A stretch of 64,000 nt of DNA from Macrostomum lignano (lineage: Eukaryota), in contig NIVC01000009.1 in NCBI GenBank assembly GCA_002269645.1, positions 1 through 64,000 of the forward strand, given 5' to 3'. A program made the position numbers and the translations under genes. Under the pieces are notes generated by a model that saw only the letters and a program-made list of their open reading frames with translations, had not been told where the DNA came from and made no database searches. Below, in pieces: positions 12,421 to 60,852 of the stretch (positions are counted from its first letter, which is position 1; the number at the start of each line of letters is the position of its first letter).

Positions 12421-13404
12421 GGTAGAGGGAGGCGAGGCCTGTAGCCAGCCTCTAAAGGCCGGTTCACACTACAGCCGCATTTTAGAAATGCAGTTTAGAC
12501 AGATTTTAAAATTGGCTGAAGGTAAAGCGAACTGGCCTCTTAGTGTTGATATTTATTTCTAATCCAGATAAATAACTTAGGAGGCCTTGGCTTTTGACTT
12601 TAGCAGGTGAACCTTAATATTCGCTTAGGATGTATATGTGTATAGCAGCAAGTTACTATATTGTTACAAGTACTGCAGTACTAGAATTACTAGACAGTAT
12701 TGCAGCTTCATAATCAGTCTGGCAACAGTGCAGGCACATATAAATCTGCTACTGATACGATAGAATAAATAGCTGCATCAGAATCTAGAGGGAGATGCAC
12801 AGGGGGGGGGGTGCCGAGAGGAAGGCGCTCACACGAGAGATGGCTGGCTACTACGGTCGAGACACTAAACCGCATACTGAAGCCCATAGGCCACCACAAT
12901 GGTGTTGGGTATGGTCGTGTACGAGCGTATTACCCTGTTTAAGTGCCGATTACAGAGAGAGATGGGGCGTGAGCGCCGTTGGGTACGCCTATAGAATTTA
13001 TGGGGATAAAATCCCCGCTTAGCAAAATGGAATAATATTTACGACTTAGCTAGTTGGTTACGCTGGACTCTGCCTGGGCACCCACGCGCCGTTTCCTGAT
13101 CGCAAGGGCTGTCCGCTTTTAACGCCTGATTATTTATGGCGCTAAATGACGATGGCCTCTGGCGCATTGGGCTGGGAGCCGGGAAAAATACTGTAAATTA
13201 TAAGTCCGCCTGACACTTGAGGTAGCAAAGTAGAATTGAATAGCGGGAGGTGCTGCAGGATTCACTGATTGCTAATTGCAGAAATGGATGGACTCAGCGA
13301 ATGGAAACGCAAGCTGGACATGAGTGTACCGAATCTCTTACCGGAGAATTCGACGTTAAAAAGTACAATATGAGAATATGGTGTACTATAGCCGGTATAA
13401 CATA

Positions 13405-14190
13405 TCTCACATCCGGACACCGGTATAACAAATCTCACATCCGGACACCGGTATAACAAATCTCACATCCGGACACCGGTATAACAAATCTCACATCCGG
13501 ACACCGGTATAACAAATCTCACATCCGGACACCGGTATAACAAATCTCACATTCGGACACTGGTATAACAAATCTCACATCCGGACACCGGTATAACAAA
13601 TCTCACATCCGGACACCGGTATAACAAATCTCACATCGGGACACCGGTATAACAAATCTCACATCCGGACACCGGTATAACAAATCTCACATCCGGACAC
13701 CGGTATAACAAATCTCACATTGGGACACCGGTATAACAAATCTCACATTCGGACACTGGTATAACAAATCTCACATTGGGACACCGGTATAACAAATCTC
13801 ACATCCGGACACCGGTATAACAAATCTCACATCCGGACACCGGTATAACAAATCTCACATTGGGACACCGGTATAACAAATCTCACATCCGGACACCGGT
13901 ATAACAAATCTCACATCCGGACACCGGTATAACAAATCTCACATTCGGACACTGGTATAACAAATCTCACATCCGGACACCGGTGTAACAAATCTCACAT
14001 TCGGACACCGGTATAACAAAACTCACATCCGGACACTGGTATAACAAAACTCACATCCGGACACCGGTATAACAAATCTCACATTGGGACACCGGTATAA
14101 CAAATCTCACATCCGGACACCGGTATAACAAATCTCACATCCGGACACCGGTATAACAAATCTCACATCCGGACACCGGTATAACAAATC
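13405..14190. repeat. 28-bp minisatellite
   Basis: Unit CCGGACACCGGTATAACAAATCTCACAT. Confidence 0.95.
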
Positions 14191-14749
14191 TTATGGCACA
14201 CTTAAAAGCCGGATCAAAAACGGGAAAACGGAAAACGCGATTTTGAAGAAGTCAGGATTTAAAATAGTCGCTTATATAATAAACGCCTCAATAAAAGAAG
14301 CAATGCCTGTATGTAGTCGTTAGACAAGCTGAGACTCTGATCTTTAATCATCTAAAAAATTCTCCCCAAGGTTTCCGCTTCACCTGGCCCTCAAAAACCT
14401 ACAGAACAGATAATTAGTCATTAAAAGAGGCACCAACGAATTGAGTCTTACTTAATTGGAAAGTTCATTGGAGTTCGCAGTGAAGAGCGATCAAGATGCG
14501 TGCCAGCAACTAATTAACACCGCATCGGTCAGCAGACTTTCATTTTCACCTGCTTAAGTGCCAGTCTGTAAGTCAATTTGAACACCTAAGAAGATCCCCT
14601 CATTTCGATTTCTCATTTTATCAGATAAAAAATCCCGCTTAACAGCTCCAAGGCGCACGCAAGCTCGATGAGCTGTCGAGATAAAATATGAACGAACTTG
14701 AGTTCACATGGAAGTCCTCAAGTTTACATGCATAAACTTCTGATGATAT

Positions 14750-30070: not shown

Positions 30071-31364
30071 CACCCCCACAAATTTGGTAGTTTTTCAAAG
30101 AAATCCCTGTTAAATTGATTTTTGCGACACAATACGAATAGCGAAATATCGATAAAGGCGAGTGAACGGTGCCCCAATTGCTAATTATCATTAAATTGGA
30201 TGTTAAAAAATCTGTTTAATAAGTCCTTTATTTAAAATATATATAGTCTTAAATATTTTCAATCGTTCACTCAAACTAAGTCGAGAGATATGGACTTAGT
30301 TGAGAATACAAATAGTTGTCATGAAATAATTTAGACAAAAACTAGATGCAGATAGAAAAGTAAATATAGTAAGAAAACATTACACACTACTAATCTTTGT
30401 TCAGTGACCGACCAAAATTTGGGTCTACAAGAAACAAAAATGTGACGTTGCCAGTTTGAGGTGGTCCCGAAAAGGGCCGTTGGACTACTGTTTCTCTATA
30501 GTTTCAACCCTTCAGTTTCACCGTTTCAACTAAACTTTTCCATTTGTTTATTGCGACGTTTGCTTGTAGTCGTGCCCAACGATTTTGTGGCAATTTCCAA
30601 TTCACTGTATATTTTGCTATCCTCTCTCGCGACCGTATAAAATTGGCACGATCGATAATTTTAAGTTCTCTCGCCAGCCAATGAAAATCACTCGTGCTTC
30701 GCGCTACCCCCCCTCTGCGCTCCTTTATTAAACCCCCGCCTGGCGGCGGCACTCCTCCCCCCCCGTCCTTATCTGTGCTTCTCTCTTCCTCCCGGCCTGT
30801 CCTCGGCCTTGTTTTCCTTCTCTCTGTCTGGGCCAGCCTGTTTACACTGCCTGCCACTGTCTGCCACGGCTAACGCCAATCTCACCACTACGCATCTGCC
30901 ACTGTTGTACTCATCGCCGTTACTCACCACGTTGCATCGTCTTGCATCACTCGCCTACCACTCGACTACAATCTCTAACTCACCTTCAAGTCAAAACCAT
31001 TGTTGCAGCCGCCAGTGCCCCAAAGCGCAATAAGTTCTATATTGATATTAACCGCATCGAATATTGATCTCAACAATAATAACCAACTACGGCCAGTTTC
31101 CGGCCTTGTATGCCAAGTGCTCCGCTACACAAATCCGCTATCAAGACTTGACTCGATTCATTTGGGACTAAAACGGCCCTTTTAAGGGTCACGGACAACA
31201 TCAAATAACGTGACAAAAAGCTCAAAAACGATGCAAAATAACAATGAAGGAAGCAACTAACTAACAAATATATTTTTGATTCAGTATAAAGTTGTTTATT
31301 TACAATTTCAATGCGTTCTTTGAGCTTGTTAAACTCAGTATAATCGAGAAGGAATATCTGGTTT

Positions 31365-42101: not shown

Positions 42102-45100
42102 ATGACGCAACGTCATCAGACAGACAGGCAGAGCGCTGAGCGTCAGCTCCGAGCCGAGTATCCAGAATTTAGCGAGCAGTGCATTCAGCAGACTTTAGAG
42201 GCGGTGAGCAAGAGTGTGGCGTGTGTGCATGGAAATTCCGTGGAAGTTCCGTTAATTAGCTGCTATTTATGTACGAGTATATGACATTGCTGCTGTAATT
42301 TCTGTCAATTAATTGCTTTGTGTTTTTTTGTTATGCTAGAGCCTACGGGCCCGTATTGCCAATATTTTAATGCAGTGTAAAACTAATTCAGAGTGAGCAG
42401 TTTTGGCTGTAACTCTATACAGGCACTAATACAGGCACTAATACAGACACTAATACAGACACTAATACAGGCACTAATACAGACACTAATACAGGCACTA
42501 ATACAGACACTAATACAGACACTAATACAGGCACTAATACAGGCACTAATACAGGCACTAATACAGACACTAATACAGGCACTAATACAGGCACTAATAC
42601 AGGCACTAATACAGGCACTAATACAGACACTAATACAGGCACTAATACAGACACTAATACAGGCACTAATACAGGCACTAATACAGACACTAATACAGAC
42701 ACTAACACAGGCACTAATACAGACACTAATACAGGCACTAATACAGACACTAATACAGGCACTAATACAGACACTAATACAGGCACTAATACAAGCACTA
42801 ATACAGACACTAATACAGACACTAATACAGACACTAATACAGACACTAATACAGACACTAATACAGGCACTAATACAGACACTAATACAGACACTAATAC
42901 AGGCACTAATACAGACACTAATACAGGCACTAATACAAGCACTAATACAGACACTAATACAGACACTAATACAGACACTAATACAGACACTAATACAGGC
43001 ACTAATACAGACACTAATACAGACACTAACACAGGCACTAATACAGACACTAATACAGGCACTAATACAGGCACTAATACAGACACTAATACAGGCACTA
43101 ATACAGACACTAATACAGACACTAATACAGGCACTAATACAGGCACTAATACAGGCACTAATACAGGCACTAATACAGACACTAATACAGGCACTAATAC
43201 AGACACTAATACAGGCACTAATACAGGCACTAATACAGACACTAATACAGACACTAACACAGGCACTAATACAGACACTAATACAGGCACTAATACAGAC
43301 ACTAATACAGGCACTAATACAGACACTAATACAGGCACTAATACAAGCACTAATACAGACACTAATACAGACACTAATACAGACACTAATACAGACACTA
43401 ATACAGACACTAATACAGGCACTAATACAGACACTAATACAGACACTAATACAGACACTAATACAGGCACTAATACAGACACTAATACAGGCACTAATAC
43501 AAGCACTAATACAGACACTAATACAGACACTAATACAGACACTAATACAGACACTAATACAGGCACTAATACAGACACTAATACAGACACTAACACAGGC
43601 ACTAATACAGACACTAATACAGGCACTAATACAGGCACTAATACAGACACTAATACAGGCACTAATACAGACACTAATACAGGCACTAATACAGGCACTA
43701 ATACAGGCACTAATACAGGCACTAATACAGACACTAATACAGGCACTAATACAGACACCATTTTTGCTCACTGTTGTGATGTTGCATATCCTTTTCAACT
43801 CTTTACAATTTGTATACTATTAAGCTTTATTTACTCGTTTTTGAATAATCTTTTCAGGATCGAATTTTACAGAGGGTTTTTTATATCACAGTTATTGGGC
43901 AATACTCTTGTTTCCGTTAGCGCATAAAGCTTGAAATTAACAAATTAATTCTCAGGAGTCTAAGAAACTCTAAGGAAATTCCGCCGGCTGAAGCAGAGTT
44001 TACAGCAATTATTAATATAGTTAATTTTGTCTCGAATTTGGCAGAAATAGAGCCCTAGCAGCCTATACTATGCCTTGTGCCCCGTGTGCAAGGGGCTGCG
44101 ACAAGATCAGCTTACCTGCCCCCCCCCGTAACCGAACCTGTTAGTTTGCAGTTAGCTTGTCTGCTATAGGCGACCTTCCTTTACGATGAAGCGAAGAGAT
44201 TAGCTACCTCCCGCTTGCTGCCAAAGCCAATGTAGTTAGGCGCATATAGTCCAGCGGTAATAAGTGGTGCTGAAGTTGAAAAAAATTACAATCGTACTCG
44301 TATGCACAAAACCTTCGAAGAAATTTTTCTCCTTTAGCTACTACTTTTGTTAGCGTCTTTGGTATTTCTTATCTTTTGGCTTCTCGCATGTATTAAGCTA
44401 GTACATGTAAGAGTTCTGCAAGCAAGGTTGATGAGTGCAGGTGCACTTGAGCTTTTTATACTCTTTCGTGGCCCAGTTGCTGGATTCACCTGTGTCAGCT
44501 AGGACTCCAGTTGCTGGATTCACCTGTGTCAGCTAGGACTCCAGTTGCTGTATTCACCTGTGTCAGCTAGGACTCCAGTTGCTGGATTCACCTGTGTCAG
44601 CTAGGACTCCAGTTGCTGTATTCACCTGTGTCAGCTAGGACTCCAGTTGCTGTATTCACCTGTGTCAGCTAGGACTCCAGTTGCTGTATTCACCTGTGTC
44701 AGCTAGGACTCCAGTTGCTGTATTCACCTGTGTCAGCTAGGACTCCAGTTGCTGTATTCACCTGTGTCAGCTAGGACTCCAGTTGCTGTATTCACCTGTG
44801 TCAGCTAGGACTCCAGTTGCTGTATTCACCTGTGTCAGCTAGGACTCCAGTTGTTGGATTCACCTGTGTCAGCTAGGACTCCAGTTGCTGGATTCACCTG
44901 TGTCAGCTAGGACTCCAGTTGCTGTATTCACCTGTGTCAGCTAGGACTCCAGTTGCTGTATTCACCTGTGTCAGCTAGGACTCCAGTTGCTGTATTCACC
45001 TGTGTCAGCTAGGACTCCAGTTGCTGTATTCACCTGTGTCAGCTAGGACTCCAGTTGCTGTATTCACCTGTGTCAGCTAGGACTCCAGTTGCTGTATTCA

Positions 45101-47069
45101 CCTGTGTCAGCTAGGACTCCAGTTGTTGGATTCACCTGTGTCAGCTAGGACTCCAGTTGTTGGATTCACCTGTGTCAGCTAGGACTCCAGTTGCTGGATT
45201 CACCTGTCTTAGGCCTATTATTGTTTGAGCAGCAATTTGTCTGTGCAGTACGTAGATGTCAGAAGTTCATTTTGACTCATTTCAAAGCAATATCTCTAAT
45301 CTCTATTTCATTCTCCACCGTCGCGCTTCGATACCGCAGCACGAATTTTCCCTGAGCCGGTGCCGCGAGGCCCTAAACCAGCTGAGAGGGCGGCAGCAGG
45401 CCAAACCGAAGCGCCGTTTCAAATGGCGCTGGCCCAAGCTGGGCGGTGGCAACCGCGGCGGCAGCAGTCGGCAGTTGTCGCCAACAGCAGCGGCAGCGCC
45501 AGCAGCTGCGGAGGCGACTGCAACAAACGGATCTGCTGCTGCGGCAGTGCAGCCTGTTGGACAAATGTCTGACGTGGATCACCACGGTGAGATGACGGGT
45601 CTTGAAGACATCTTCCCACAAGCACTTCATTCACACGCTCACACAGGGCTTGGGGTTGCTATCATGGGTGTTGACTTGCACGACAAGCCCTTTGGCTTTG
45701 GTCAATTTTCGCGAACAAAGCTCTGAATTAATGTGACCGCCGCGAGAGGCAGACGCGTTCACCGCTGAGCTGCTCCGCCCTGAACCAGCTACCCTTAGTT
45801 GCTAAAACTGGTTCAGCTTCGGGACGGCAAGGCATTTCGCGCCAATTTTGAACCTTCCAGTAGCCGTGCAGCGCCACAGCCTGAATCGCATTGCTAGCGC
45901 CCGGTCGACATCGTCCAACAGCCTGACGCTTGCCTGGCGGGCCGTGACCGCCCGACGGGAGATGCTGGCGCTGCTGCTGCCGATGCACGTCTCGGCTACG
46001 CAGAACGGCGTATCGCAAGGCGCGGCCAGCTCCGTAATCTTCGAGCTGGCTCGCGACACCCTATTAAACGATATTCGTCAACTGAATCGCCAATGGGCGA
46101 CTCTTAACAGTTCGAGAGGCGATTGGCAGCAGCAGCAACAACACACGCTGGCTCCAAGCTCGGCCGTTACGCGACGTCGTCCAAAATTCGGTTGCAACTC
46201 TGGCGGCGGTGGGAGCGGCAGCGCAGATTCTGGACAGGCGCCGCGGCATCAGCGAGTGTCCGTTTCGCTCCTGCCAGCTCCCAGTGGGGCCGCCGGTGAG
46301 CTTTGAGTGTTGTATAAAACAGAACAGTCAACTATACTCAGCAACATTGAAAAGTCGCCACTCTATGGCCCAGTGAGCAATTTTCAGAGCGAGTATATTA
46401 GAAATTGTTATCCTATTTTTTTATTAGAGGCAGGGGGGTTGTGTGTCCCTGGCGCATTTTAAGCGACATAGGCACACAACCGGCGAGAGGCATTACTGCC
46501 CATTCCGCCGACTCCCCTGAGCAGGCATACGAGCGCGCGGATACGTACGCAGGCACACACTCACACAGGAGTGTACAGCGGCCCTAATTTTTTTTTATCG
46601 TTAGGCATGTACACTTCACTACGCCTTGGGGGTTGGCCCTCAAGGGTGTTAATTGCACGAGCAGAGCCAAGCCGAGATTCAAATTCAGCCCCAAATTAAT
46701 GTGACTGCACTGGGAATCGAGCCTGGGCCGCTGGCACATCAGAGCGCCGCGCTGGACCACTGGGCTACGGCCCGCGTCCCAATGCGACTGCTGACATGAC
46801 AACAATAAGCTACTGGCATTGCTAGCATAAATTTCACATGGAAAATCTATTCTTCAGGTGCCCCGCCTCCGATCCTGCTGTTCCGGCCATCGTCGGTGCC
46901 GCAGGAGGCTGCCCCGGCGCCGTCGCTGCCGCCGTGGCACTGTCAGTGCTGCACATTCGCTAACCACCCGGACCTGCTTGAGTGCGAAATGTGCTCAGCG
47001 GAGCGGCCGCAGCTGCAGAGACCGCGAGCCGCTTCGATTTCATTGGATCGGCCAACTGCCAGGAGCTAG
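42102..47069 (+). CDS. TAB2/TAB3-like protein: N-terminal CUE-like domain, coiled coil, C-terminal NZF zinc finger; 4 exons
   Basis: Exons 42102-42203, 45340-45586, 45861-46295, 46858-47069 with consistent phases. The CUE-like domain is joined across intron 1 (QLRAEYPEFSEQCIQQTLEA|HEFSLSRCREAL). The NZF WHCQCCTFANHPDLLECEMC resembles the TAB2 NZF and is not in the ORF track. Confidence 0.75.
42415..43758. repeat. 12-bp minisatellite AG(G/A)CACTAATAC
   Basis: About 112 units; source of the spurious 448-476 aa ORFs. Confidence 0.97.
44473..45210. repeat. 34-bp minisatellite
   Basis: CACCTGTGTCAGCTAGGACTCCAGTTGCTGTATT units. Confidence 0.95.
46588..46775 (-). mobile_element. tRNA-derived SINE-like insert in TAB2-like intron 3
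   Basis: Minus strand GGGCCGTAGCCCAGTGG (A-box) ... GGCTCGATTCC (B-box); A-rich tail at ~46588. Confidence 0.5.
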
Positions 47070-48553: not shown

Positions 48554-49110
48554 CTTTAGTCGAAGCTTTACACCTAGCGGGGAAATGGGGATAGGCAAGA
48601 AGCTATTTTTCTAAGCCATGCACAAGCTTCACTTTTCTTACTCAGAAGCACAACTGCAATGCAAATTACATGCTACCCAGAAGCTACAAGTGTAAAGGCC
48701 GCTTCACATCCCGTATAGCAAACTGCGGAAGAAATACTCGTACTTCTTTCGTGACTCAATTTTGTGATTCTTTATAAAAAAGACTATTTCACACTGAGTT
48801 CGAGACAAATAAAGAAATAAACAACTAAATTAATATTTGGTTGAATAATGTAATAGTAAATGATAAAAAATCACTAATGTTAAACGCGTTTATTTAACAT
48901 TTATTCATACATGTAAAATGTGAAAAACACGTTTCTGAATGCAGAATACGATTAAACGCAAGTCATGCAAAGATTTTAGAATGGACACGCATTTAGACAA
49001 TGCAGAAACTTTTACAACTAGCTCGATCGATGATACATGAAATTGCAAATGTATACTTTGTACAAAGGTTATTCAAGAGACTCAGTCCTTGAAGAATGTG
49101 CAGATGATGC

Positions 49111-51027
49111 TCAGTCGACCTCCTCAACGGTGGGTCCTCCAGCTCGCTGATGTCCAGGCTGAGGCTGACCAGACTGCTGCTGCTGCTGATGAAGCTTGGC
49201 CATGATTGGCGAGCAGCGGCTGCTGAGTTGCTGCTGCTGGTGGGCAATCTCGTCCTTCTCGGCAGTCTGGTTGTTCTCCAGCCAGGAAATCACTTGCTCG
49301 CAGGCGGCCACCACCTCGGCGGAGTCCTTCTCGCCCAGCTTGTCCTTGCAGTCGTTGGCAGCCTGCTTGTACTGGAAGGCGAGCGACTCGAGCTGGTTGC
49401 GGGCCGCCAGGCGCTCGCGGTGCCGCTCGTCCTCCTCGCGGAACTTCTCCGCATCCCGCACCATCCTGTCGATCTCGTCCTTCGAGAGGCGGCCCTTGTC
49501 GTTCGTGATCGTGATCTTCTCCTCCTTGCTGGTGCTCTTGTCTTTCGCCGACACCACCAGGATTCCGTTGGCGTCAACGTCGAAGGTCACCTCGATCTGA
49601 GGGACTCCGCGCGGCGCTGGCGGGATCCCGTCCAGGTTGAACCGGCCCAGCAGGTGGTTGTCTCTGGTGAGCGCTCGCTCGCCCTCGAACACCTGCACCG
49701 TGACGCCGCTCTGGTTGTCCGAGTAGGTGGTGAACGTCTGCGTCGCCTTGGTCGGGATGCGGCTGTTCCGCTCGACAATCTTGGTCATCACCCCGCCGGC
49801 GGTCTCGATGCCGAGAGACAGCGGCGCCACATCCAGCAGCAGCAGGTCGTCGATCTTGTCGTCCTTCACGCCAGTCAGCACCGCAGCCTGCACGGCAGCT
49901 CCGTAGGCGACCGCCTCGTCCGGGTTGATCGACTTGTTCAGCGTCCGACCGCCCATGAATTCTTGCAGCAACTTCTGCACCCTCGGGATCCGGGTTGATC
50001 CGCCAACCAGCACGATCTCGTTGATGTTGCTCTTGTCCATCTTGGCGTCTCTCAGCGCTCGCTCCACCGGCTCCATCGTCTGGCGAAACAGGTCGGCGCA
50101 CAGCTCCTCGAATCGAGCCCTGGTGACGCTCGTGTAAAAATCGATGCCCTCGAACAGCGAGTCAATCTCGATGCTCGCCTGTGCCGAGCTGCTCAGCGTT
50201 CGCTTCGCTCGCTCAGCCGCAGTCCGAAGGCGTCTCACAGCCCGAGCGTTGCCGCTCATGTCCTTGCGGTACTTGCGCTTGAACTCTTGCATCAGGTGCT
50301 CAACCAGACGATGATCAAAGTCCTCGCCGCCGAGGTGGGTGTCGCCGGCGGTTGCGCGCACCTCGAACATGCTGCCCTCCGACACTGTCAGGATGGACAC
50401 GTCGAACGTGCCGCCTCCCAGGTCAAAGATGAGAATGTTCTTCTCACCCTGCAGGTTCTTGTCCAGACCGTAGGCCAGTGCCGCAGCAGTCGGCTCGTTC
50501 ACGATGCGCAGCACGTTCAGTCCGGCAATCGCCCCGGCATCCTTCGTTGCCTGTCGCTGACTGTCGTTGAAGTAGGCCGGCACTGTGATCACCGCGTCAG
50601 ACACCTTCTCGCCGAGGTAGGCCTCCGCCGTCTCCTTCATCTTGGTGAGAACCATGGCGGAGATCTCCTCCGGGTAGAAGCTGCGCCTCTCGCCCATGTA
50701 CTGCACCTCAATCTTGGGTCGGCCTCCGTCGTTCGTCACCTTGAATGGCCACAGCTTCATGTCCCTCTGCACCGTCTCGTCTCCGAACTTTCGTCCGATC
50801 AGACGCTTCGCGTCAAACACCGTGTTGTCCGGATTCATCGCCACCTGGTTCTTTGCAGCGTCGCCTACCAGCCTCTCCGTGTCCGTGAAGGCCACGTAGC
50901 TGGGAGTGGTTCGGTTGCCCTGGTCATTGGCAATGATCTCCACTTTGCCTGCCTGGAACACGCCAACGCACGAGTACGTGGTGCCCAGGTCAATGCCGAT
51001 TGCAGGTCCGTTGTTGCTCTTACCCAT
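49111..51027 (-). CDS. HSP70: Cytosolic HSP70, intronless inducible type, copy A
   Basis: 638 aa; [36 protein letters not shown]-terminal PTVEEVD. Confidence 0.98.
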
Positions 51028-51185
51028 GTTGTCGATCGATTAATTCGCACTTGCTTGATATACGAGTAGTAGCGTAGGCTGATGCGTCTGTTGCCTTGAT
51101 GGCTTGCTTGGCTTTGCTGTTCGTTTCGTTCGCCTTGCGATCCGATTTCAATTCTTGCCTCCAATTCTGGGCCGGGTGCTTCTCT

Positions 51186-51280
51186 TTTATAGACTCCGGC
51201 CCGTTTCTAGAAGTTTCCCGCACCATCCTCCGCGAATGCGCCGCGAGCTATTTTTAGCTCGTTCTGGAAATTTCTCGAAA
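51186..51280 (-). promoter_or_regulatory. HSP70-A promoter: TATA plus 3-unit and 4-unit heat-shock elements
   Basis: Mirror image of 56006-56100. Confidence 0.9.
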
Positions 51281-51698
51281 AAAGAATTGCTTGACAAATT
51301 TTACCGTTTGCGTCTATTTCGCCTACTTTAAGTAGAAAGTAACAAACCTGTAGTCTAATATTCTTACAAACATATTTACAATGTTGAATGAATCAAGAAA
51401 TCCTGTGGAAAATGGGGTTAACGAATATTAACGATCGTTTTGGTAGCAAAGAATTCATTTTGTTATTCAATATTTATTTGTTAAAACAATCAGGTCTTTC
51501 AGATTAACTGATTCTGGAAATCGGCGATATGTATAGAACAAGCATTGCAAGCACAAAACAAAAGTCAGAAAAGTGCTATGTTTTAAAGCCGACTCAATCT
51601 TCTGAAGTGAAACAAAAAGAAAATACAAACAGTTAGTCATTTTAATATAATTTTTTAGTTAGTGCTTATTGGAAGTGCACAAAACAAAATGGCAAAAA

Positions 51699-51817
51699 AG
51701 ACAACAGCATTTGGTATTCCCAGGCGGTCACCCATCCAAGTACTAACCAAACCCAACGTTGCTTAACTTCGGTGATCAGACGAGAACCGGTGTTTTCAAC
51801 GTGGTATGGCCGTTGCC
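51699..51817 (-). rRNA. 5S rRNA gene, copy A
   Basis: 119 nt, GGCAACGGCCATACCAC...GTACTTGGATGGGTGACCGCCTGGGAATACC; T6 terminator. Confidence 0.92.
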
Positions 51818-52004
51818 AATTACCGAGAGCACTCAACTTCAATTTATACTTTGCTACCGCCGCATTTGTGTCAGTAGGCAATACGTAACGTAAGTAATAT
51901 GGCCCATTTTGTTTCGACCAAGAGCCAATAGCCTCCTCGCCTTATCGGGATGATGAATCTACCAATCCTTAATTGATAGTTCTCTCTGCGTTGAATCGAC
52001 AATC

Positions 52005-53085
52005 AGATAATGACAGTCAGGTAATGGCACTCAGATAATGATCGTCATATAATGACAGTCAGATAATGACAGTCAGATAATGACAGTCAGATAATGACAG
52101 TCAGATAATGACAGTCAGATAATGACAGTCAGATAATGACAGTCAGATAATGACAGTCAGATAATGACAGTCAGATATGACAGTCCGATAATCACAGTCA
52201 GATAATGACAGTCAGGTATGACAGTCAGATATGACACTCAGATAATGACAGTCAGATAATGAAAGTCAGATAATGAAAGTCAGATATGACAGTCCGATAA
52301 TGACAGTCAGATAATGACAGTCAGATATGACAGTCCGATAATCACAGTCAGATAATGACAGTCAGATAATGACAGTCAGGTATGACAGTCAGGTATGACA
52401 GTCAGATATGACAGTCAGATAATGAAAGTCAGATAAAGACAGTCAGATAATGACAGTCAGATAAAGAAAGTCAGATAATGAAAGTCAGATATGACAGTCC
52501 GATAATGACAGTCAGATAATGACAGTCAGATATGACAGTCCGATAATCACAGTCAGATAATGACAGTCAGATAATGACAGTCAGGTATGACAGTCAGGTA
52601 TGACAGTCAGATATGACAGTCAGATAATCACAGTCAGATAAAAACAGTCAGATAATGACAGTCATATGACAGTCCGATAATCACAGTCAGATAATGACAG
52701 TCAGATATGATAGTCAGATATGATAGTCAGATAATGACAGTCAGATAATGACAGTCAGGTATGACAGTCAGATATGATAGTCAGATAGTGACAGTCAGAT
52801 AATGACAGTCAGATAATGACAGTCAGATAATGACAGTCAGATAAAGACAGTCAGATAATGACAGTCAGATATGATAGTCAGATATGACAGTCAGATATGA
52901 CACTCAGATAATGACAGTCAGATATGATAGTCAGATAATGACAGTCAGATAATGACAGTCAGATAATGACAGTCAGATAATGACAGTCAGATAATGACAG
53001 TCAGATATGATAGTCAGATAATGACAGTCAGATATGACACTCAGATAATGACAGTCAGATAATGAAAGTCAGATAGTGACAGTTC
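52005..53085. repeat. 14/13-bp satellite (AATGACAGTCAGAT), long array
   Basis: Direct reading; inverted short copy at 55028-55285. Confidence 0.95.
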
Positions 53086-53299
53086 TGAAATCGACATTTA
53101 AGATTCCAGGAGTTCACAACGGCCTTATTCTGCATGGAATCGAAATTTCCATTTCCATTGAGTGCGAAAAGGATGCTTTGCAAAAGTTGAGTTTGGTTCT
53201 GGACTCTGACTGCTTTGTTTGATTTGCTTGTTTGTTTTTGTTTATTTGGTTGAAATACATGAAATGGAAATAATCCATTATCGGCCCGACTTTTCGGGC

Positions 53300-54341
53300 C
53301 AAAATGAAATCGTCTATGGCAATAATCGAATATCAGCCCGCCCGATAGCCACGTAGTCATGGTACAATATATATGTTACTCAGGGACAACTAAAACTACC
53401 GGGACGCGAAACAAGCCAAGGTGAAAAAAGTTGGGGGCTCGTTTGAAAGCAGTGTTCTATGGCCGTTCCAACTGCAACTCTTCAGTCTAAAGGGTGGTGA
53501 GGGCAAATAAAAAGCCCTCAACTCGTGTGCGACTGTGAAAAATGTCGAGAAAGTGCAGCGTCTTTAACTGCAGATCAAACTATAACTCAGAAGAAAGCCG
53601 AAACGCCCTCAACTCTTGTGCGACTGTGAAAAATGTCGAGAAAGTGCAGCGTCTTTAACTGCAGATCAAACTATAACTCAGAAGAAAGCCGAACACGATA
53701 TTTTCTCTTCCTTGAGATGCACGAGAACGGGAGCGTTGGAGACAAACCCTACCAAATATTTTTGAGGTAAGAAGGATGTTAATTCTAAGCGATCATACGC
53801 TGGTATGCGTGGATGAATTTATTACAAACAAATTGTTAAAAATAACCACTGCGATAAAATTTACCATTCTAGAAAGTGACTGAACACATGGACATATGCC
53901 AAAAGCACTGGCCAAGTGACACCCCATGTTGAAGAATGGTCGACATGAAAGACCGAAAGATCCGCCTTCTGTCTTCTCTGGCTTTCCCTCTTCGTGCTTG
54001 ATACAGACAGACAGACAGACAGTTTTTATTGCCCTAAACTTCTCCGTTCGCGCATTCGCATACGCCAGTTTTGAACAATAATTGGCAAACTGAATCCAAT
54101 GGAACCTTAACTATTCAACCGCCAGGTGCAGACAGTTATATCGGCCAAATGGATGGACGTGATCCGACTGTACAAATCAGAAGAATATCACGTTGTCAAA
54201 CGAACGGAATTAACCCACGAAGCTTGCTATCCTTCAGTTCAAGCATACAGAAAAACGAAGGTAACACTCGCTCTCCAAGTCTTCAATGAAAAGGTTGTTG
54301 CAGCACTGAAGTGCGACGGCTCCATAGACACGACAGTATGA
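53300..54341 (+). mobile_element. Degraded P-element/THAP9-like transposase fragment in the palindrome spacer
   Basis: ORF 54126-54341 (AKWMDVIRLYKSEE..VVKRTELTHEACYP...KVTLALQVFNEKVVAAL) resembles the central P/THAP9 transposase region; upstream sequence is broken by stops and frameshifts. Confidence 0.5.
53515..53693. repeat. Two-copy ~92-bp tandem duplication
   Basis: CCCTCAACTC(G/T)TGTGCGACTGTGAAAAATGTCGAG...GAAAGCCGAA occurs twice. Confidence 0.9.
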
Positions 54342-55027
54342 GTCGTCGGCTTACGAATGTTTATTTTAAAGGCCTGGTAAAGCGCTCATCGAAGGTTGCA
54401 CCTGCGCCGACTACATCGCACGACAGAAAGCTACGCAAACTGGAAGGCCAGTGAATTTGCGGTAGAGTTTTTAGTATTCTGTCTTTGGAGTTTCAAATTT
54501 TCCAATCCGAAATCTTTCATATCTAGCTGCTCCTCATCTGGGTTCCTCCTAAAATTCGTTCTGTTTAGTCCTGATTTTCTGTGTTCTATTCTACGAGTAC
54601 GAGTTGCCGTGTACTTTTGTACACACACCATTTCATGCTTTTAAACTTTTTTCTCTTGTGCTTATCTCACATGCTTAAATATATGTAATTTTCGCTCAGT
54701 ACCCCAGTTTTTCCTATACAGTATACAGGTTTCCGTATAAGTTCCTCCTCAAATAAGTTATGTTCAGTTCCGTTCCACGATATATACACCATGCTAAGTT
54801 TAAACCTTTTCTTCGTGAATATCTCGCGTGTCTAATCGTATGTCATTGTGCTCTGTACGGCCGTTTTTTAGTACCCAAAAAAACAAAAAAACAATATTTA
54901 AAACTGAACAAAAACCTTTTAGACAAGTTACTGAACCTTTTAAAGCAAAAATAATACTGTGGCCTTAGTCTTTTCAGCAGCTAAGCTAAGCATTTATTGC
55001 ATGAAAAATCGGGCGCCCATTACCTTA

Positions 55028-55285
55028 CCTGACTGTCATTATCTGACTGTCATTATCTGACTGTGATTATCGGACTGTCATATCTGACTGTCATTATCTG
55101 ACTGTCATTATCTGACTGTCATTATCTGACTGTCATTATCTGACTGTCATTATCTGACTGTCATTATCTGACTGTCATTATCTGACTGTCATTATCTGAC
55201 TGTCATTATCTGACTGTCATTATCTGACTGTCATTATATGACGATCATTATCTGAGTGCCATTACCTGACTGTCATTATCTGATT
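55028..55285. repeat. 14-bp satellite, short inverted array at the inner end of the right arm
   Basis: ATCTGACTGTCATT units. Confidence 0.95.
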
Positions 55286-55468
55286 GTCGATTCAACGCAG
55301 AGAGAACTATCAATTAAGGATTGGTAGATTCATCATCCCGATAAGGCAAGGAGGCTATTGGCTCTTGGTGGATACAAAATGGGCCATATTACTTACGTTA
55401 CGTATTGCCTACTGACACAAATGCGGCGGTAGCGAAGTATAAATTGAAGTTGAGTGCTCTCGGTAATT

Positions 55469-55587
55469 GGCAACGGCCATACCACGTTGAAAACACCGGT
55501 TCTCGTCTGATCACCGAAGTTAAGCAACGTTGGGTTTGGTTAGTACTTGGATGGGTGACCGCCTGGGAATACCAAATGCTGTTGTCT
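55469..55587 (+). rRNA. 5S rRNA gene, copy B
   Basis: Identical to copy A. Box A and box C intact, helix I pairs, TTTTTT terminator, TATAAA at 55438-55443 (about -30). Confidence 0.92.
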
Positions 55588-56005
55588 TTTTTGCCATTTT
55601 GTTTTGTGCACTTCCAATAAGCACTAACTAAAAAATTATATTAAAATGACTAACTGTTTGTATTTTCTTTTTGTTTCACTTCAGAAGATTGAGTCGGCTT
55701 TAAAACATAGCACTTTTCTGACTTTTGTTTTGTGCTTGCAATGCTTGTTCTATACATATCGCCGATTTCCAGAATCAGTTAATCTGAAAGACCTGATTGT
55801 TTTAACAAATAAATATTGAATAACAAAATGAATTCTTTGCTACCAAAACGATCGTTAATATTCGTTAACCCCATTTTCCACAGGATTTCTTGATTCATTC
55901 AACATTGTAAATATGTTTGTAAGAATATTAGACTACAGGTTTGTTACTTTCTACTTAAAGTAGGCGAAATAGACGCAAACGGTAAAATTTGTCAAGCAAT
56001 TCTTT

Positions 56006-56100
56006 TTTCGAGAAATTTCCAGAACGAGCTAAAAATAGCTCGCGGCGCATTCGCGGAGGATGGTGCGGGAAACTTCTAGAAACGGGCCGGAGTCTATAAA
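56006..56100 (+). promoter_or_regulatory. HSP70-B promoter: distal HSE, proximal HSE, TATA
   Basis: TTCgaGAAatTTCcaGAA (56007-56024), GAAacTTCtaGAA (56069-56081), TATAAA (56095-56100). Confidence 0.92.
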
Positions 56101-56258
56101 AGAGAAGCACCCGGCCCAGAATTGGAGGCAAGAATTGAAATCGGATCGCAAGGCGAACGAAACGAACAGCAAAGCCAAGCAAGCCATCAAGGCAACAGAC
56201 GCATCAGCCTACGCTACTACTCGTATATCAAGCAAGTGCGAATTAATCGATCGACAAC

Positions 56259-58175
56259 ATGGGTAAGAGCAACAACGGACCTGCAATCGGCATTGACCTG
56301 GGCACCACGTACTCGTGCGTTGGCGTGTTCCAGGCAGGCAAAGTGGAGATCATTGCCAATGACCAGGGCAACCGAACCACTCCCAGCTACGTGGCCTTCA
56401 CGGACACGGAGAGGCTGGTAGGCGACGCTGCAAAGAACCAGGTGGCGATGAATCCGGACAACACGGTGTTTGACGCGAAGCGTCTGATCGGACGAAAGTT
56501 CGGAGACGAGACGGTGCAGAGGGACATGAAGCTGTGGCCATTCAAGGTGACGAACGACGGAGGCCGACCCAAGATTGAGGTGCAGTACATGGGCGAGAGG
56601 CGCAGCTTCTACCCGGAGGAGATCTCCGCCATGGTTCTCACCAAGATGAAGGAGACGGCGGAGGCCTACCTCGGCGAGAAGGTGTCTGACGCGGTGATCA
56701 CAGTGCCGGCCTACTTCAACGACAGTCAGCGACAGGCAACGAAGGATGCCGGGGCGATTGCCGGACTGAACGTGCTGCGCATCGTGAACGAGCCGACTGC
56801 TGCGGCACTGGCCTACGGTCTGGACAAGAACCTGCAGGGTGAGAAGAACATTCTCATCTTTGACCTGGGAGGCGGCACGTTCGACGTGTCCATCCTGACA
56901 GTGTCGGAGGGCAGCATGTTCGAGGTGCGCGCAACCGCCGGCGACACCCACCTCGGCGGCGAGGACTTTGATCATCGTCTGGTTGAGCACCTGATGCAAG
57001 AGTTCAAGCGCAAGTACCGCAAGGACATGAGCGGCAACGCTCGGGCTGTGAGACGCCTTCGGACTGCGGCTGAGCGAGCGAAGCGAACGCTGAGCAGCTC
57101 GGCACAGGCGAGCATCGAGATTGACTCGCTGTTCGAGGGCATCGATTTTTACACGAGCGTCACCAGGGCTCGATTCGAGGAGCTGTGCGCCGACCTGTTT
57201 CGCCAGACGATGGAGCCGGTGGAGCGAGCGCTGAGAGACGCCAAGATGGACAAGAGCAACATCAACGAGATCGTGCTGGTTGGCGGATCAACCCGGATCC
57301 CGAGGGTGCAGAAGTTGCTGCAAGAATTCATGGGCGGTCGGACGCTGAACAAGTCGATCAACCCGGACGAGGCGGTCGCCTACGGAGCTGCCGTGCAGGC
57401 TGCGGTGCTGACTGGCGTGAAGGACGACACGATCGACGACCTGCTGCTGCTGGATGTGGCGCCGCTGTCTCTCGGCATCGAGACCGCCGGCGGGGTGATG
57501 ACCAAGATTGTCGAGCGGAACAGCCGCATCCCGACCAAGGCGACGCAGACGTTCACCACCTACTCGGACAACCAGAGCGGCGTCACGGTGCAGGTGTTCG
57601 AGGGCGAGCGAGCGCTCACCAGAGACAACCACCTGCTGGGCCGGTTCAACCTGGACGGGATCCCGCCAGCGCCGCGCGGAGTCCCTCAGATCGAGGTGAC
57701 CTTCGACGTTGACGCCAACGGAATCCTGGTGGTGTCGGCGAAAGACAAGAGCACCAGCAAGGAGGAGAAGATCACGATCACGAACGACAAGGGCCGCCTC
57801 TCGAAGGACGAGATCGACAGGATGGTGCGGGATGCGGAGAAGTTCCGCGAGGAGGACGAGCGGCACCGCGAGCGCCTGGCGGCCCGCAACCAGCTCGAGT
57901 CGCTCGCCTTCCAGTACAAGCAGGCTGCCAACGACTGCAAGGACAAGCTGGGCGAGAAGGACTCCGCCGAGGTGGTGGCCGCCTGCGAGCAAGTGATTTC
58001 CTGGCTGGAGAACAACCAGACTGCCGAGAAGGACGAGATTGCCCACCAGCAGCAGCAACTCAGCAGCCGCTGCTCGCCAATCATGGCCAAGCTTCATCAG
58101 CAGCAGCAGCAGTCTGGTCAGCCTCAGCCTGGACATCAGCGAGCTGGAGGACCCACCGTTGAGGAGGTCGACTGA
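56259..58175 (+). CDS. HSP70: Cytosolic HSP70, intronless inducible type, copy B
   Basis: 638 aa; the translation differs from copy A only at DDKID/DDTID (site 57430 vs 49856); AATAAA at 58381. Confidence 0.98.
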
Positions 58176-60852
58176 GCATCATCTGCACATTCTTCAAGGA
58201 CTGAGTCTCTTGAATAACCTTTGTACAAAGTATACATTTGCAATTTCATGTATCATCGATCGAGCTAGTTGTAAAAGTTTCTGCATTGTCTAAATGCGTG
58301 TCCATTCTAAAATCTTTGCATGACTTGCGTTTAATCGTATTCTGCATTCAGAAACGTGTTTTTCACATTTTACATGTATGAATAAATGTTAAATAAACGC
58401 GTTTAACATTAGTGATTTTTTATCATTTACTATTACATTATTCAACCAAATATTAATTTAGTTGTTTATTGTCATTTCTCACATGGCATATGCATGGCGA
58501 TCGTTTAGGGACGGTCTAACGGGATTACAATGGATATTAACTCGGACTTGCTGGCCTATCTATACATGTTAGTCCAGTACCCGTTTCTCCCAGTCCCAGC
58601 CAATTCAGAGGAGAGTTCATATACATTTTACGGTATTCATATTATTTAAATGCTTACTGAAGGAACTGAAGAACTAATCACAATTCGCAATTTTCTCATG
58701 CGCCCATTCTTTCTCTAGAGTAATTTCTCAGACAAGCTTTAATTCTAACGTCCTTATAATTTCATGGACATGACCTGTCGCTGTAACACTCATTTGAACC
58801 TCCTGCGCTGTAAGCAAATTTTTTTGCGACAACTCTTGCACTGTCGACGTCCCCATGTATACAGGTTGTACATAATGCTTGCAATACATGTATATTAAAC
58901 ACCTGTTTATAATACATAAAGCATATTTTAGAAAACAAATTGCAGTCTGAAAAAGTACTGAGTTTCACTAAGGGTATACATATACCATAGATTTTAAGAG
59001 CTGGCTTTATGTTCATTTTGATGTTACAAGTACACTGATACATGCAGCTGTAACTATACCAATACTATATATACATTGTACCATATCCAACCGTTGAGTA
59101 ATTTTATGGACGATCCAATTGATCGGACATACAGTCTGCATGCACTACATAGATTCGGTTCTGAACCGGAATCGAGAATACGAAAAAGGTCATTGGTTTA
59201 GATCGACAAAGCCAGAAGAGAAGAAACAAATATGGGGATCCAACTGGCTCTGGTTCCGAAAGTACTATAGAATCAATAGAATCGATACTTAAAGTATTAC
59301 CCAACAACTGTAAATAAGCAATTAATTTCAAAAGTGAATGACTCCGTAAATTAAAAACAGTAAAACATAGTTTATATATTACTTTTACGTATTGACTTTT
59401 AATTTACATTGAAGTTTTTGTTAAAATATGTAATAATTTACAAAATTTTAAACTTTCCAAGAAAAATCTAAGAAAAGCTCAACAACTTAAAATAGTACCT
59501 CTTGGTCCTTTTGTAAGCATGAGGAACAAGATGAATAACTATCTTTATGATCTTAATTTCGAAATATATTAGAAGTAATTTCTGGTGTTCTTAACTGTTA
59601 GGAATTATAAACGCGAGTTAAAAACAATGAAAATATACAATGTTCTTAGACTTAAAACAACGAAAAGAGTTTTGTCATTGCGTGATTATTGTCTACAGGA
59701 ACTACACTACTGTATTAAATTGGTCGTTTGCTCTTGGTACAAAAAGCCTTACTTAATATCTACCTATTTAAATCCAGAATAGGTGCCAATTACAAAGTCG
59801 ATGCACACGTTTTACTATAATTTTTTAAATGGTAACTATAGGGCTTTTCACATTACCAATTCCAGAACCAGAATCGGTTCGGATTTCCAAAAAAACAGTA
59901 TAACTATTTAACTTTTTTGAATGTTTAACTGCCTTAACAGCCTCACTTTTCACAATTTTTCACTTTCTTCTTGGCTATTGCCATACAATAATCACAACTT
60001 TAAAGCACTAATATCCCTCTAGTTTAGGAGACAAAAAGTTATACTTTACAAATTGGATCTGGTTCTAGAACCAGAATAAGCAATATGAAAAGGCCTTGTT
60101 AAACAATTAGTAATTTTTATTATTCTATGATATACAAATACTGTGTGCTCTTTTTGTTAAAATGAAGAATATTTACTAATGAATTAACAGTTCTGTCTTA
60201 TAGTTTGAATTTATTACTTGTGAATAACCAAAGTATACATGAAATAAATGCTTATGTTTATCTTAATAGAAAAACTATATAGGCCTCGCCTTTTCAGTTT
60301 AATATAATTTATATTTTTATTTCATTTCATTAAATTCATTAATTTGATTCAAACTGATATCACTATTAAATAGAAGGTAGGCCTAAACATTGCCAATTAA
60401 TATAAAGTATGTTTGTTTTGGATAGCCATAAGTAAATAAAAAAGATTTATTAGATTTCTAAAATGTCATTTTTATCATAAATATAAACTTAAATATGCAA
60501 AAATTAAAATAAATTGATTTCGTGTTTTATTGACTAGTAGTAATACATAAATCCACTTATACTAAATACTTTACTATATCTTCTAAGAATGGTATAATTA
60601 CAATTTAGCTAGAGTATAATTTTTCTTTGATTATAAGTCTTAGGCTTTAATATTTGATAAGTATCTAAGCTATTATAAATCAAATCAAGTGAATATATGG
60701 CAAATTTAACAAGTAGCGATAACTATATATTTTTAATAGTTTTTTACTCAGAGTTTTCAAATTATATTTTTTGCTTTTTATATCATCTTTATATACACAA
60801 AATTTAAAATAATCATTTATTTATTTATAGGATATTACTTAAAGAACAAGTC

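What the first reader, a model, noticed from the sequence alone, without database searches (positions are those of the whole stretch)
51186..56100. 5S rRNA gene fixed directly upstream of each HSP70 promoter: a Pol III/Pol II cassette
Seen: each arm has a solo 119-nt 5S gene transcribed toward HSP70, with TATAAA at about -30 and a T6 terminator. It ends ~420 bp upstream of a perfect 4-unit HSE. Everything I compared from the 5S through the HSP70 promoter is identical between arms. Known: 5S genes are usually in tandem arrays or linked to histone, snRNA or SL-RNA units, and TFIIIC-bound Pol III genes can act as barriers or keep chromatin open. I know of no described 5S-HSP70 unit, but could not search. 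Inference: the 5S may insulate the stress promoter from the adjacent satellite and transposon spacer, keep it poised, or be co-regulated under heat shock.
Basis: partly seen in the sequence, partly recalled or inferred. Interest (0 to 1): 0.8.

Follow-up and report, generated by a model that had tools for sequence, protein, structure and literature searches.

The report
Stray 5S gene beside duplicated HSP70
In the flatworm Macrostomum lignano an intact extra copy of the 5S ribosomal RNA gene lies about 670 bases upstream of a heat-shock HSP70 gene, and the whole block is present twice as a near-identical mirror-image duplication. The layout is real, but nothing shows that the two genes work together.

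Summary
Two full-length 5S rRNA genes (51699-51817 minus, 55469-55587 plus; Rfam 116.5 bits each) each point toward an intronless HSP70 gene. Each has TATAAAT at -31 and a T6 terminator, and each ends 418 nt before a perfect 4-unit heat-shock element.

The two copies are not independent. They lie in one 3,362-nt inverted repeat that differs at only 5 positions, so "each arm" records a single event.

The window is Macrostomum lignano: UniProt HSP70 gene models of that species translate the window's 5'UTR identically. In this species the main 5S rDNA is a tandem cluster at one chromosome end. A Macrostomum-type contig shows a 5S gene linked to the spliced-leader RNA gene, with the same -31 TATA but unrelated flanks.

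The HSP70-linked 5S is therefore an intact extra-array ("orphan") gene caught in an HSP70 duplication. It is not a SINE or a retro-pseudogene.

I found no comparative evidence for a conserved 5S-HSP70 unit. A Schistosoma HSP70 cluster and one other HSP70 locus lack a 5S gene, the closest relative's contig is too short to tell, and the rest of the M. lignano genome was out of reach. Insulator or poising roles remain speculation.

Modest interest; new member of known kinds.

The parts
48816..52177 (.). Left arm of the inverted repeat: HSP70 3'UTR, HSP70, promoter, 5S gene, and the start of the satellite
   Evidence: 3,362 nt; 5 mismatches to the right arm: 49856, 51852, 51913, 51916, 51938
55109..58470 (.). 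Right arm of the inverted repeat
51699..51817 (-). 5S rRNA gene, left copy, 119 nt
   Evidence: RF00001, 116.5 bits, full model. Matches the published M. lignano primers 5SF and 5SR exactly
55469..55587 (+). 5S rRNA gene, right copy, 119 nt, identical to the left copy
   Evidence: Box C TGGATGGGTGACCGCCTG matches 17 of 18 positions of Xenopus box C as recalled from memory
55438..55444 (+). TATAAAT upstream element of the 5S gene at -31 to -25 (left-arm mirror: 51842-51848, minus strand)
   Evidence: The same motif at the same distance occurs in the independent 5S gene of L006
55587..55592 (+). T6 Pol III terminator (mirror: 51694-51699). Further T4-5 runs follow at 55597, 55602, 55663 and 55668
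55588..56005 (+). 418-nt AT-rich (30% GC) spacer between the 5S gene and the distal HSE. No RNA family match, no repeat elsewhere in the window, no similarity to L001
56007..56024 (+). Distal heat-shock element, 4 perfect nGAAn/nTTCn units (mirror: 51262-51279)
   Evidence: 2 matches against 0.00 expected. Conserved in L001
56029..56038 (+). CTAAAAATAG, a MEF2-consensus-like motif between the two HSEs, conserved in relative L001
   Evidence: GAGCTAAAAATAG is identical in both. The MEF2 assignment is from memory only
56069..56081 (+). Proximal heat-shock element, 3 units (mirror: 51205-51217)
56095..56102 (+). HSP70 TATA box TATAAAAG (mirror: 51184-51191)
56259..58175 (+). HSP70 gene, right copy: intronless, 638 aa, ends in EEVD, has T at residue 391
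49111..51027 (-). HSP70 gene, left copy: 638 aa, K at residue 391 (its only difference). Identical to M. lignano UniProt models P0017 and P0125 where those models are intact
58381..58397 (+). Two AATAAA poly(A) signals. The repeat ends about 75 nt further on, so its outer boundary is just past the HSP70 transcription unit
51998..53083 (+). 14-nt minisatellite GACAGTCAGATAAT, about 79 copies
55025..55288 (-). The same 14-nt minisatellite in inverted orientation, about 19 copies
53084..55024 (.). Unique centre between the arms. It holds a 91-nt x2 duplication with a THAP-like start (MSRKCSVFNC) and a weak P-element/THAP9-transposase-like fragment
   Evidence: PF21788 E=0.0045, below cutoff

Best explanation
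This is an intact 5S rRNA gene lying outside the species' main 5S array (an 'orphan' copy). It happens to sit about 670 nt upstream of the start codon of a canonical heat-inducible HSP70 gene in Macrostomum lignano.

A block running from a minisatellite, through the 5S gene and the HSP70 promoter and coding region, to just past the poly(A) signals was duplicated in inverted orientation. Alternatively, or in addition, the block has been kept uniform by gene conversion. Either process gives the divergent HSP70 pair and makes the 5S gene appear 'in each arm'.

Shown:
- the 5S gene has every sequence feature of a working Pol III type-1 gene;
- HSP70 has a standard HSE/TATA promoter;
- the two arms are 99.85% identical;
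- the species' main 5S genes are elsewhere, in a tandem cluster.

Inferred:
- the 5S copy is transcribed by Pol III and makes ordinary 5S rRNA;
- Pol III stops at the T6 or at one of the many following T-runs, well before the HSP70 promoter;
- the linkage to HSP70 is an accident of where this copy landed, and any effect on HSP70 is a by-product, not a selected function.
For: 5S integrity:
- 116.5 bits over the full Rfam model and a canonical fold.
- Box C nearly identical to the Xenopus consensus.
- T6 terminator directly after the gene.
- TATAAAT at -31 to -25, at the same distance as in the independent 5S gene of L006, whose flanks are otherwise unrelated.

One event, not two:
- The arms are 3,362 nt with 5 differences.
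- The repeat ends about 75 nt after the HSP70 poly(A) signals and runs inward into the satellite.

Species and normal 5S context:
- M. lignano UniProt gene models reproduce the window's 5'UTR translation and the left-arm K variant exactly.
- In M. lignano the 5S rDNA is a single FISH cluster at the end of MLI2p, amplified as a 1,645-bp unit. The authors say they cannot exclude a few copies elsewhere (PMC5704211, PMC7013459).
- L006 shows a 5S gene about 330 nt downstream of the exact M. lignano spliced leader. The window has no SL gene and no tandem 5S.

No conservation found:
- No 5S gene in the S. mattheei HSP70 cluster or in L003.
- Promoter similarity between the window and L001 stops at the distal HSE.
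- No paper in the searched library links 5S and HSP70 genes.
Against: - Other HSP70 paralogues and homeologues of M. lignano, and other Macrostomum species, could not be examined. A conserved linkage is therefore not excluded.
- The whole stretch from the 5S TATA to the HSP70 ATG is free of differences between the arms. With only 5 differences, though, that is expected about 25% of the time.
- The complete Pol III promoter means TFIIIA/TFIIIC/TFIIIB are probably bound 0.4 kb from a stress promoter. Some cis effect is physically plausible.
Confidence: 0.62

Rival explanations
1. Functional Pol III/Pol II cassette. The TFIIIC/TFIIIB-bound 5S gene acts as a barrier or nucleosome-excluding element. 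It shields the HSP70 promoter from the repeat-rich surroundings or keeps it poised for rapid induction.
For: - The 5S promoter is complete and close to the HSEs (418 nt).
- The locus is embedded in minisatellites.
- tRNA genes and TFIIIC sites are established barriers in yeasts and mammals (own knowledge).
- The region from the 5S TATA to HSP70 has no differences between the arms.
Against: - It rests on a single evolutionary event.
- The absence of differences is not significant (p about 0.25).
- No 5S gene lies near HSP70 in the other loci examined.
- Minisatellites occur throughout the window, so there is nothing special to insulate against.
- Barrier activity is documented mainly for tDNAs, and for 5S rDNA the published effect on a linked reporter is repression (PMC3261910).
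- The 5S gene lies on only one side of each HSP70 gene.
Confidence: 0.12
2. Repressive nucleolar tether. The 5S sequence draws the locus toward the nucleolar periphery and damps basal HSP70 transcription, as reported for ectopic 5S rDNA in mouse cells.
For: Fedoriw et al. [quoted passage not shown] The 5S gene here has intact internal control elements.
Against: - There are no data from flatworms.
- The same objection applies as above: one event and no conservation.
- HSP70 genes are already tightly off without heat through HSF regulation.
Confidence: 0.05
3. Assembly artefact. The mirror-image duplication is a long-read palindrome or chimera artefact, and only one 5S-HSP70 block exists.
For: Near-perfect inverted repeats are a known failure mode of long-read assemblies (own knowledge). 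The arms are 99.85% identical.
Against: - The arms are separated by 2.9 kb of asymmetric sequence: 1,086 against 264 nt of satellite, plus a 1.9-kb unique centre.
- They differ at 5 positions, including a K/T codon difference.
- The UniProt model P0125 fuses antisense HSP70 to sense HSP70, as expected if the assembly it was predicted from contains the same divergent pair.
- Even if this rival were true, the 5S-HSP70 adjacency itself would stand.
Confidence: 0.05
4. 5S-derived SINE or retro-pseudogene. The 5S is the head of a mobile element present in many dispersed copies.
For: SINE3-type elements with 5S-derived heads exist in some animals (own knowledge). This copy lies outside the array.
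Against: - The match is full-length at 116.5 bits and is followed at once by a T6 terminator.
- There is no A-rich or LINE-like tail.
- The upstream TATA, which lies outside the transcript, is retained at the native distance.
- There are no other copies or fragments in the 64 kb.
Confidence: 0.03

Closest known systems
Extra-array ('orphan' or dispersed) 5S rRNA gene copies
   Same: A single complete 5S gene with its own promoter elements and terminator, away from the species' tandem 5S rDNA cluster. The M. lignano cytogenetics papers explicitly leave room for such copies (PMC5704211).
   Different: Here it lies within 0.7 kb of a heat-shock gene and has been duplicated together with it. Its expression and its copy number in the genome are unknown.
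Divergent inverted-repeat pairs of inducible hsp70 genes kept alike by gene conversion (e.g. Drosophila 87A; own knowledge)
   Same: Two intronless HSE/TATA-driven HSP70 genes sit head-to-head with near-identical coding and flanking sequence.
   Different: The repeated unit here also carries a Pol III gene and a minisatellite. The spacer is 2.9 kb with a transposase-like remnant.
5S rRNA genes linked to SL RNA genes in repeat units (nematodes, flatworms and others; PMC7346339)
   Same: Both are cases of a 5S gene physically linked to another small transcription unit. L006 shows this arrangement with the exact M. lignano spliced leader.
   Different: The window copy has no SL RNA gene. Its partner is a Pol II protein-coding gene, and the unit is a two-copy inverted repeat, not a tandem array.
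tDNA/TFIIIC chromatin barriers and insulators (yeast, mouse, human; own knowledge)
   Same: A Pol III gene with internal promoter boxes sits between a repeat tract and a Pol II promoter.
   Different: No binding or barrier data exist here. 5S genes use TFIIIA-dependent type-1 promoters, and barrier activity for them is not established. No positional conservation was found.
5S rDNA as a nucleolar-association and repression element (Fedoriw et al. 2012, PMC3261910)
   Same: A 119-bp 5S sequence lies next to a Pol II gene.
   Different: That work used mouse transgenes and pseudogenes.
SINE3 and other 5S-derived SINEs (own knowledge)
   Same: 5S sequence found outside the rDNA array.
   Different: There is no SINE body or tail, the terminator follows directly, the external TATA is retained, and no further copies occur in the window.

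Membership tests
5S rRNA gene (Rfam RF00001; Pol III type-1 gene) | Sequence and secondary structure match over the full length | tested here: met
   116.5 bits against a gathering score of 38, model positions 1-120. The minimum-free-energy fold is the three-way junction.
5S rRNA gene (Rfam RF00001; Pol III type-1 gene) | Internal control region (box A, intermediate element, box C) | tested here: met
   Box C matches 17/18, the intermediate element 4/6 and box A 10/15 against the Xenopus somatic 5S sequence, which was recalled from memory.
5S rRNA gene (Rfam RF00001; Pol III type-1 gene) | Oligo-T terminator directly after the gene | tested here: met
   T6 at 55587-55592.
5S rRNA gene (Rfam RF00001; Pol III type-1 gene) | Lineage-typical upstream element | tested here: met
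   TATAAAT at -31 to -25 in both the window and L006, with otherwise unrelated flanks.
5S rRNA gene (Rfam RF00001; Pol III type-1 gene) | Transcribed and incorporated into ribosomes | not testable with these tools
   Needs small-RNA data or Pol III ChIP. The copy is identical to the published primers in their 40 nt, so reads may not tell it apart from array copies.
Tandem 5S rDNA array | Head-to-tail repeats of a unit of constant length (1,645-bp PCR product in M. lignano) | tested here: not met
   Only two copies, inverted, 3.65 kb apart. Array data are from PMC5704211.
5S-SL RNA linked unit | SL RNA gene next to the 5S gene | tested here: not met
   No match to the 35-nt SL plus GT with up to 3 mismatches anywhere in the window. 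The SL is present in L006.
Heat-inducible HSP70 | HSP70 domain, cytosolic EEVD end, HSE arrays and a TATA box upstream, no introns | tested here: met
   PF00012 850 bits. The protein ends in EEVD. A 4-unit and a 3-unit HSE plus TATAAAAG lie upstream. The ORF is uninterrupted. Induction itself was not tested.
Pol III-gene chromatin barrier or insulator | TFIIIC/TFIIIB occupancy and position-dependent protection of the neighbouring gene | not testable with these tools
   Needs ChIP and reporter assays.
Pol III-gene chromatin barrier or insulator | Conserved placement across paralogues and species, as a proxy for selection | tested here: inconclusive
   Absent from the S. mattheei HSP70 cluster and from L003. 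L001 is too short.
5S-derived SINE (SINE3-like) | 5S-related head fused to a body and tail without an intervening terminator; many dispersed copies | tested here: not met
   T6 directly after position 119, no tail, and no other copies in 64 kb. The genome-wide copy number was not testable.

The most novel reading that the evidence does not exclude
The 5S gene has been co-opted as a cis-element of this HSP70 locus. Its TFIIIA/TFIIIC/TFIIIB complex would hold open, or fence off, the stress promoter in a genome saturated with minisatellites. Selection would keep the 5S-HSP70 block together, so the same arrangement would be found at the homeologous loci and in sibling Macrostomum species.
Probability: 0.1. 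Interest if true: 0.6.

Novelty: new member of a known kind. Interest (0 to 1): 0.25.

Why it matters
If the linkage were functional, it would be a natural example of a Pol III gene serving a Pol II stress promoter. It would occur in an animal where it can be tested directly: M. lignano has stable transgenesis, a heat-shock reporter line and heat-shock RNA-seq (PMC6371448; bioRxiv 10.1101/2024.12.18.629116).

As it stands, the locus matters mainly for annotation:
- It documents an intact 5S gene outside the FISH-visible array.
- It documents a divergent HSP70 pair undergoing homogenisation.
- It explains several mis-fused UniProt HSP70 gene models of M. lignano.

Tried and rejected
Looking for the same locus or related loci:
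- Exact-protein look-ups of both HSP70 copies, of the ORF spanning the 5S gene and of a spacer ORF found nothing on record. The UniProt model P0008 also has no contig.
- Contigs of the closest HSP70 relatives were too short or were transcripts: L001 has 422 nt upstream, L002 146 nt and L005 47 nt.
- The single metagenome scan, with a 5S pattern, returned only L004. This is an unrelated AT-rich eukaryote with a convergent 5S pair.
- Scans of genome contigs and viral contigs with a Macrostomum-specific 5S stretch found nothing.

Protein searches used indirectly:
- Translating the 5S-spanning ORF and searching proteins gave many 5S-overlapping ORFs from other animals. Only one was Macrostomum-like (P0133, giving L006).
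- A concatenated query of all ORFs in the upstream region hit only M. lignano HSP70 gene models. This settled the species but gave no further upstream sequence.

Ideas rejected:
- SINE or retro-pseudogene origin: rejected because of the terminator, the external TATA and the lack of a tail.
- Hairpin assembly artefact: rejected because of the asymmetric 2.9-kb spacer and the 5 differences.
- Pol III read-through into the HSP70 promoter: at least ten T4-6 runs lie in the spacer.
- A hidden small RNA gene in the spacer: no Rfam match at E<=5.
- Histone stem-loop hits at 30437 and 31170: sub-threshold, with no histone ORF between them.

Literature: searches for a 5S-HSP70 linkage found nothing relevant.


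Full report
**What is there**

Rfam finds exactly two 5S rRNA genes in the 64-kb window, at 51699-51817 (minus) and 55469-55587 (plus). Each scores 116.5 bits over the whole model. Nothing further appears at E<=1, and blastn finds no other copy of the gene or its flanks. The 119-nt RNA folds into the canonical three-way junction.

Each 5S gene points toward an uninterrupted 638-codon HSP70 ORF: 49111-51027 (minus) and 56259-58175 (plus). The protein scores 850 bits against Pfam HSP70 and ends in EEVD.

On the plus-strand arm the order is as follows:
- 14-nt minisatellite, 55025-55288
- 5S TATAAAT, 55438-55444 (-31 to -25)
- 5S gene
- T6 terminator, 55587-55592
- 418-nt spacer, 30% GC
- four-unit HSE, 56007-56024
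- CTAAAAATAG, 56029-56038
- three-unit HSE, 56069-56081
- TATAAAAG, 56095-56102
- HSP70 ATG, 56259
- stop codon, 58173-58175
- two AATAAA signals, 58381-58397

The HSEs are far above chance. The four-unit pattern has 2 matches against 0.00 expected. The three-unit pattern has 6 matches against 0.68 expected, and all 6 lie in the two promoters.

**The two arms are one event**

The arms 48816-52177 and 55109-58470 form a 3,362-nt inverted repeat with only 5 differences. One difference is a K/T codon change in HSP70. The other four cluster within 87 nt just upstream of the 5S TATA, at 51852-51938. That clustering is non-random (p about 3e-4 by simulation).

No difference lies between the 5S TATA and the HSP70 ATG. 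With five differences in total, this is expected about a quarter of the time and carries no weight.

The repeat ends about 75 nt past the HSP70 poly(A) signals on the outside and runs into the satellite on the inside. The centre is asymmetric: 1,086 against 264 nt of satellite, and a 1.9-kb unique stretch with a sub-threshold P-element/THAP9-transposase-like fragment. That asymmetry, together with the five differences, argues against a palindromic assembly artefact. 'A 5S gene upstream of each HSP70' is thus a single juxtaposition copied once, or homogenised by gene conversion. This is the usual behaviour of divergent hsp70 pairs (own knowledge, e.g. Drosophila 87A).

**Whose genome**

The HSP70 protein is 92-96% identical to Macrostomum lignano UniProt entries. 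The lower figures come from faulty gene models. P0017, P0124 and P0125 contain the translation of window 56039-56266, which is 5'UTR and promoter, without a single difference. They also carry the left-arm K variant. P0125 fuses antisense HSP70 to sense HSP70, as expected if the assembly behind it contains the same divergent pair. P0126 shows a diverged version of the same 5'UTR, so at least one more related locus exists.

The published M. lignano 5S primers 5SF and 5SR match the window's 5S gene exactly.

**The normal home of 5S genes in this species**

FISH places the M. lignano 5S rDNA as one cluster at the end of chromosome arm MLI2p. Outward-facing primers amplify a 1,645-bp unit. The authors note that a few copies elsewhere could not be excluded (PMC5704211, PMC7013459).

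A 5S-overlapping ORF search led to contig L006 (ENA). This contig carries the exact 35-nt M. lignano spliced leader followed by GTAAG at 132-171 (SL sequence from PMC8629364). A 5S gene lies at 498-616 on the same strand (112.7 bits, three differences from the window copy). This is the familiar SL RNA-5S linkage (PMC7346339).

Outside the 5S gene, L006 and the window share only TATAAATTG at the same distance (-31) and the T-run.

Two things follow. First, the window copy carries the lineage's native external promoter element, which a retro-copy would lack. Second, it sits in a different context from the SL-linked copy. The window has no SL gene and no tandem 5S.

**What it most likely is**

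It is an intact extra-array 5S gene that lies next to a heat-inducible HSP70 gene and was carried along when the HSP70 block was duplicated in inverted orientation. I expect it to be transcribed by Pol III and terminated at the T6. About ten further T4-6 runs in the spacer make read-through into the HSP70 promoter unlikely. I regard the linkage as incidental (confidence about 0.6).

**Why not more**

The insulator, poising and co-regulation ideas need either conservation or an assay, and neither is available.
- The three-gene Schistosoma mattheei HSP70 cluster (31 kb) has no 5S gene. Neither does another metazoan HSP70 locus with 10 kb of flank on each side.
- In the nearest relative available (L001, 85% protein identity), the distal HSE, the CTAAAAATAG motif, the proximal HSE and the TATA box are conserved. 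Similarity stops at the distal HSE, and the contig ends 422 nt upstream of the ATG, short of where a 5S gene would lie.
- The satellite next to the 5S gene is one of more than 30 minisatellite arrays in the window, so it is not a special boundary.
- The one experimental precedent for a 5S sequence beside a Pol II reporter reports nucleolar association and repression, not protection (PMC3261910).
- Searches of the paper library found no described 5S-HSP70 unit.

**What could not be done**

It is the decisive and easy next step. M. lignano also has transgenesis, a heat-shock reporter line and heat-shock RNA-seq (PMC6371448; bioRxiv 10.1101/2024.12.18.629116), so a promoter-reporter test with and without the 5S gene is feasible.

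**Verdict**

The parts are ordinary and the juxtaposition is undescribed but so far singular. Interest is modest.

Noticed in passing
L006 132-171 and 498-616 (ENA ERZ27313526 k141_4074847): A Macrostomum-type contig carries the exact 35-nt M. lignano spliced leader plus the GTAAG donor, and about 330 nt downstream on the same strand a 5S rRNA gene. This is an SL RNA-5S linkage. I did not find it described for this genus in the searched papers.
   Followed up: partly
L006 95-140 and 1125-1172: A 48-nt element just upstream of the SL start recurs, at 83% identity, 1,030 nt downstream. It may be a shared snRNA-type promoter element.
   Followed up: partly
window 56026-56038; L001 about 250-262: GAGCTAAAAATAG, which contains a MEF2-consensus-like CTAAAAATAG, lies between the distal and proximal HSEs. 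It is identical in the window and in a relative with only 85% HSP70 protein identity, while the surrounding sequence has diverged.
   Followed up: no
window 51852-51938 / 55348-55434: Four of the five differences between the arms cluster in 87 nt just upstream of the 5S TATA (p about 3e-4). This may be the edge of a gene-conversion tract or a patch copied from a third locus.
   Followed up: partly
window 1-64000 (e.g. 4479-5119, 6998-7894, 13392-14191, 42417-43758, 44473-45207): More than 30 distinct minisatellite arrays with periods of 4-59 nt fill the window. Most ORFs of 200 aa or more are artefacts of these repeats.
   Followed up: no
window 53510-53693 and 54126-54341: A 91-nt tandem duplication encodes a THAP-like start (MSRKCSVFNC). 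A nearby ORF matches the P-element/THAP9 transposase GTP-binding insertion domain weakly (E=0.0045). Together they look like a decayed P-like transposon in the centre of the inverted repeat.
   Followed up: partly
UniProt M. lignano models P0017, P0124, P0125, P0126, P0121 (A0A1I8I8J9, A0A1I8HH09, A0A1I8I9J3, A0A1I8IHW4, UPI0007A2D90C): These public HSP70 gene models are mis-built. They translate 5'UTR or promoter sequence, skip parts of the coding region, fuse antisense and sense copies of the inverted pair, or fuse HSP70 to a downstream kinase-like gene.
   Followed up: partly
L004 2115-2233 (+), 2287-2405 (-), 8328-8421 (-) (JGI Ga0209922_105419): An unrelated AT-rich eukaryotic metagenome contig has two complete 5S genes convergent and 53 nt apart, plus a partial third, among protein-coding ORFs. 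This is another example of non-tandem 5S genes.
   Followed up: no
window 30437-30483 (-), 31054-31140 (-), 31170-31215 (+): ARAGORN calls a tRNA-Cys(ACA). It is flanked by two sub-threshold histone 3' stem-loop matches (22-24 bits against a gathering score of 34). No histone ORF lies between them, so these are probably chance or repeat-derived.
   Followed up: partly
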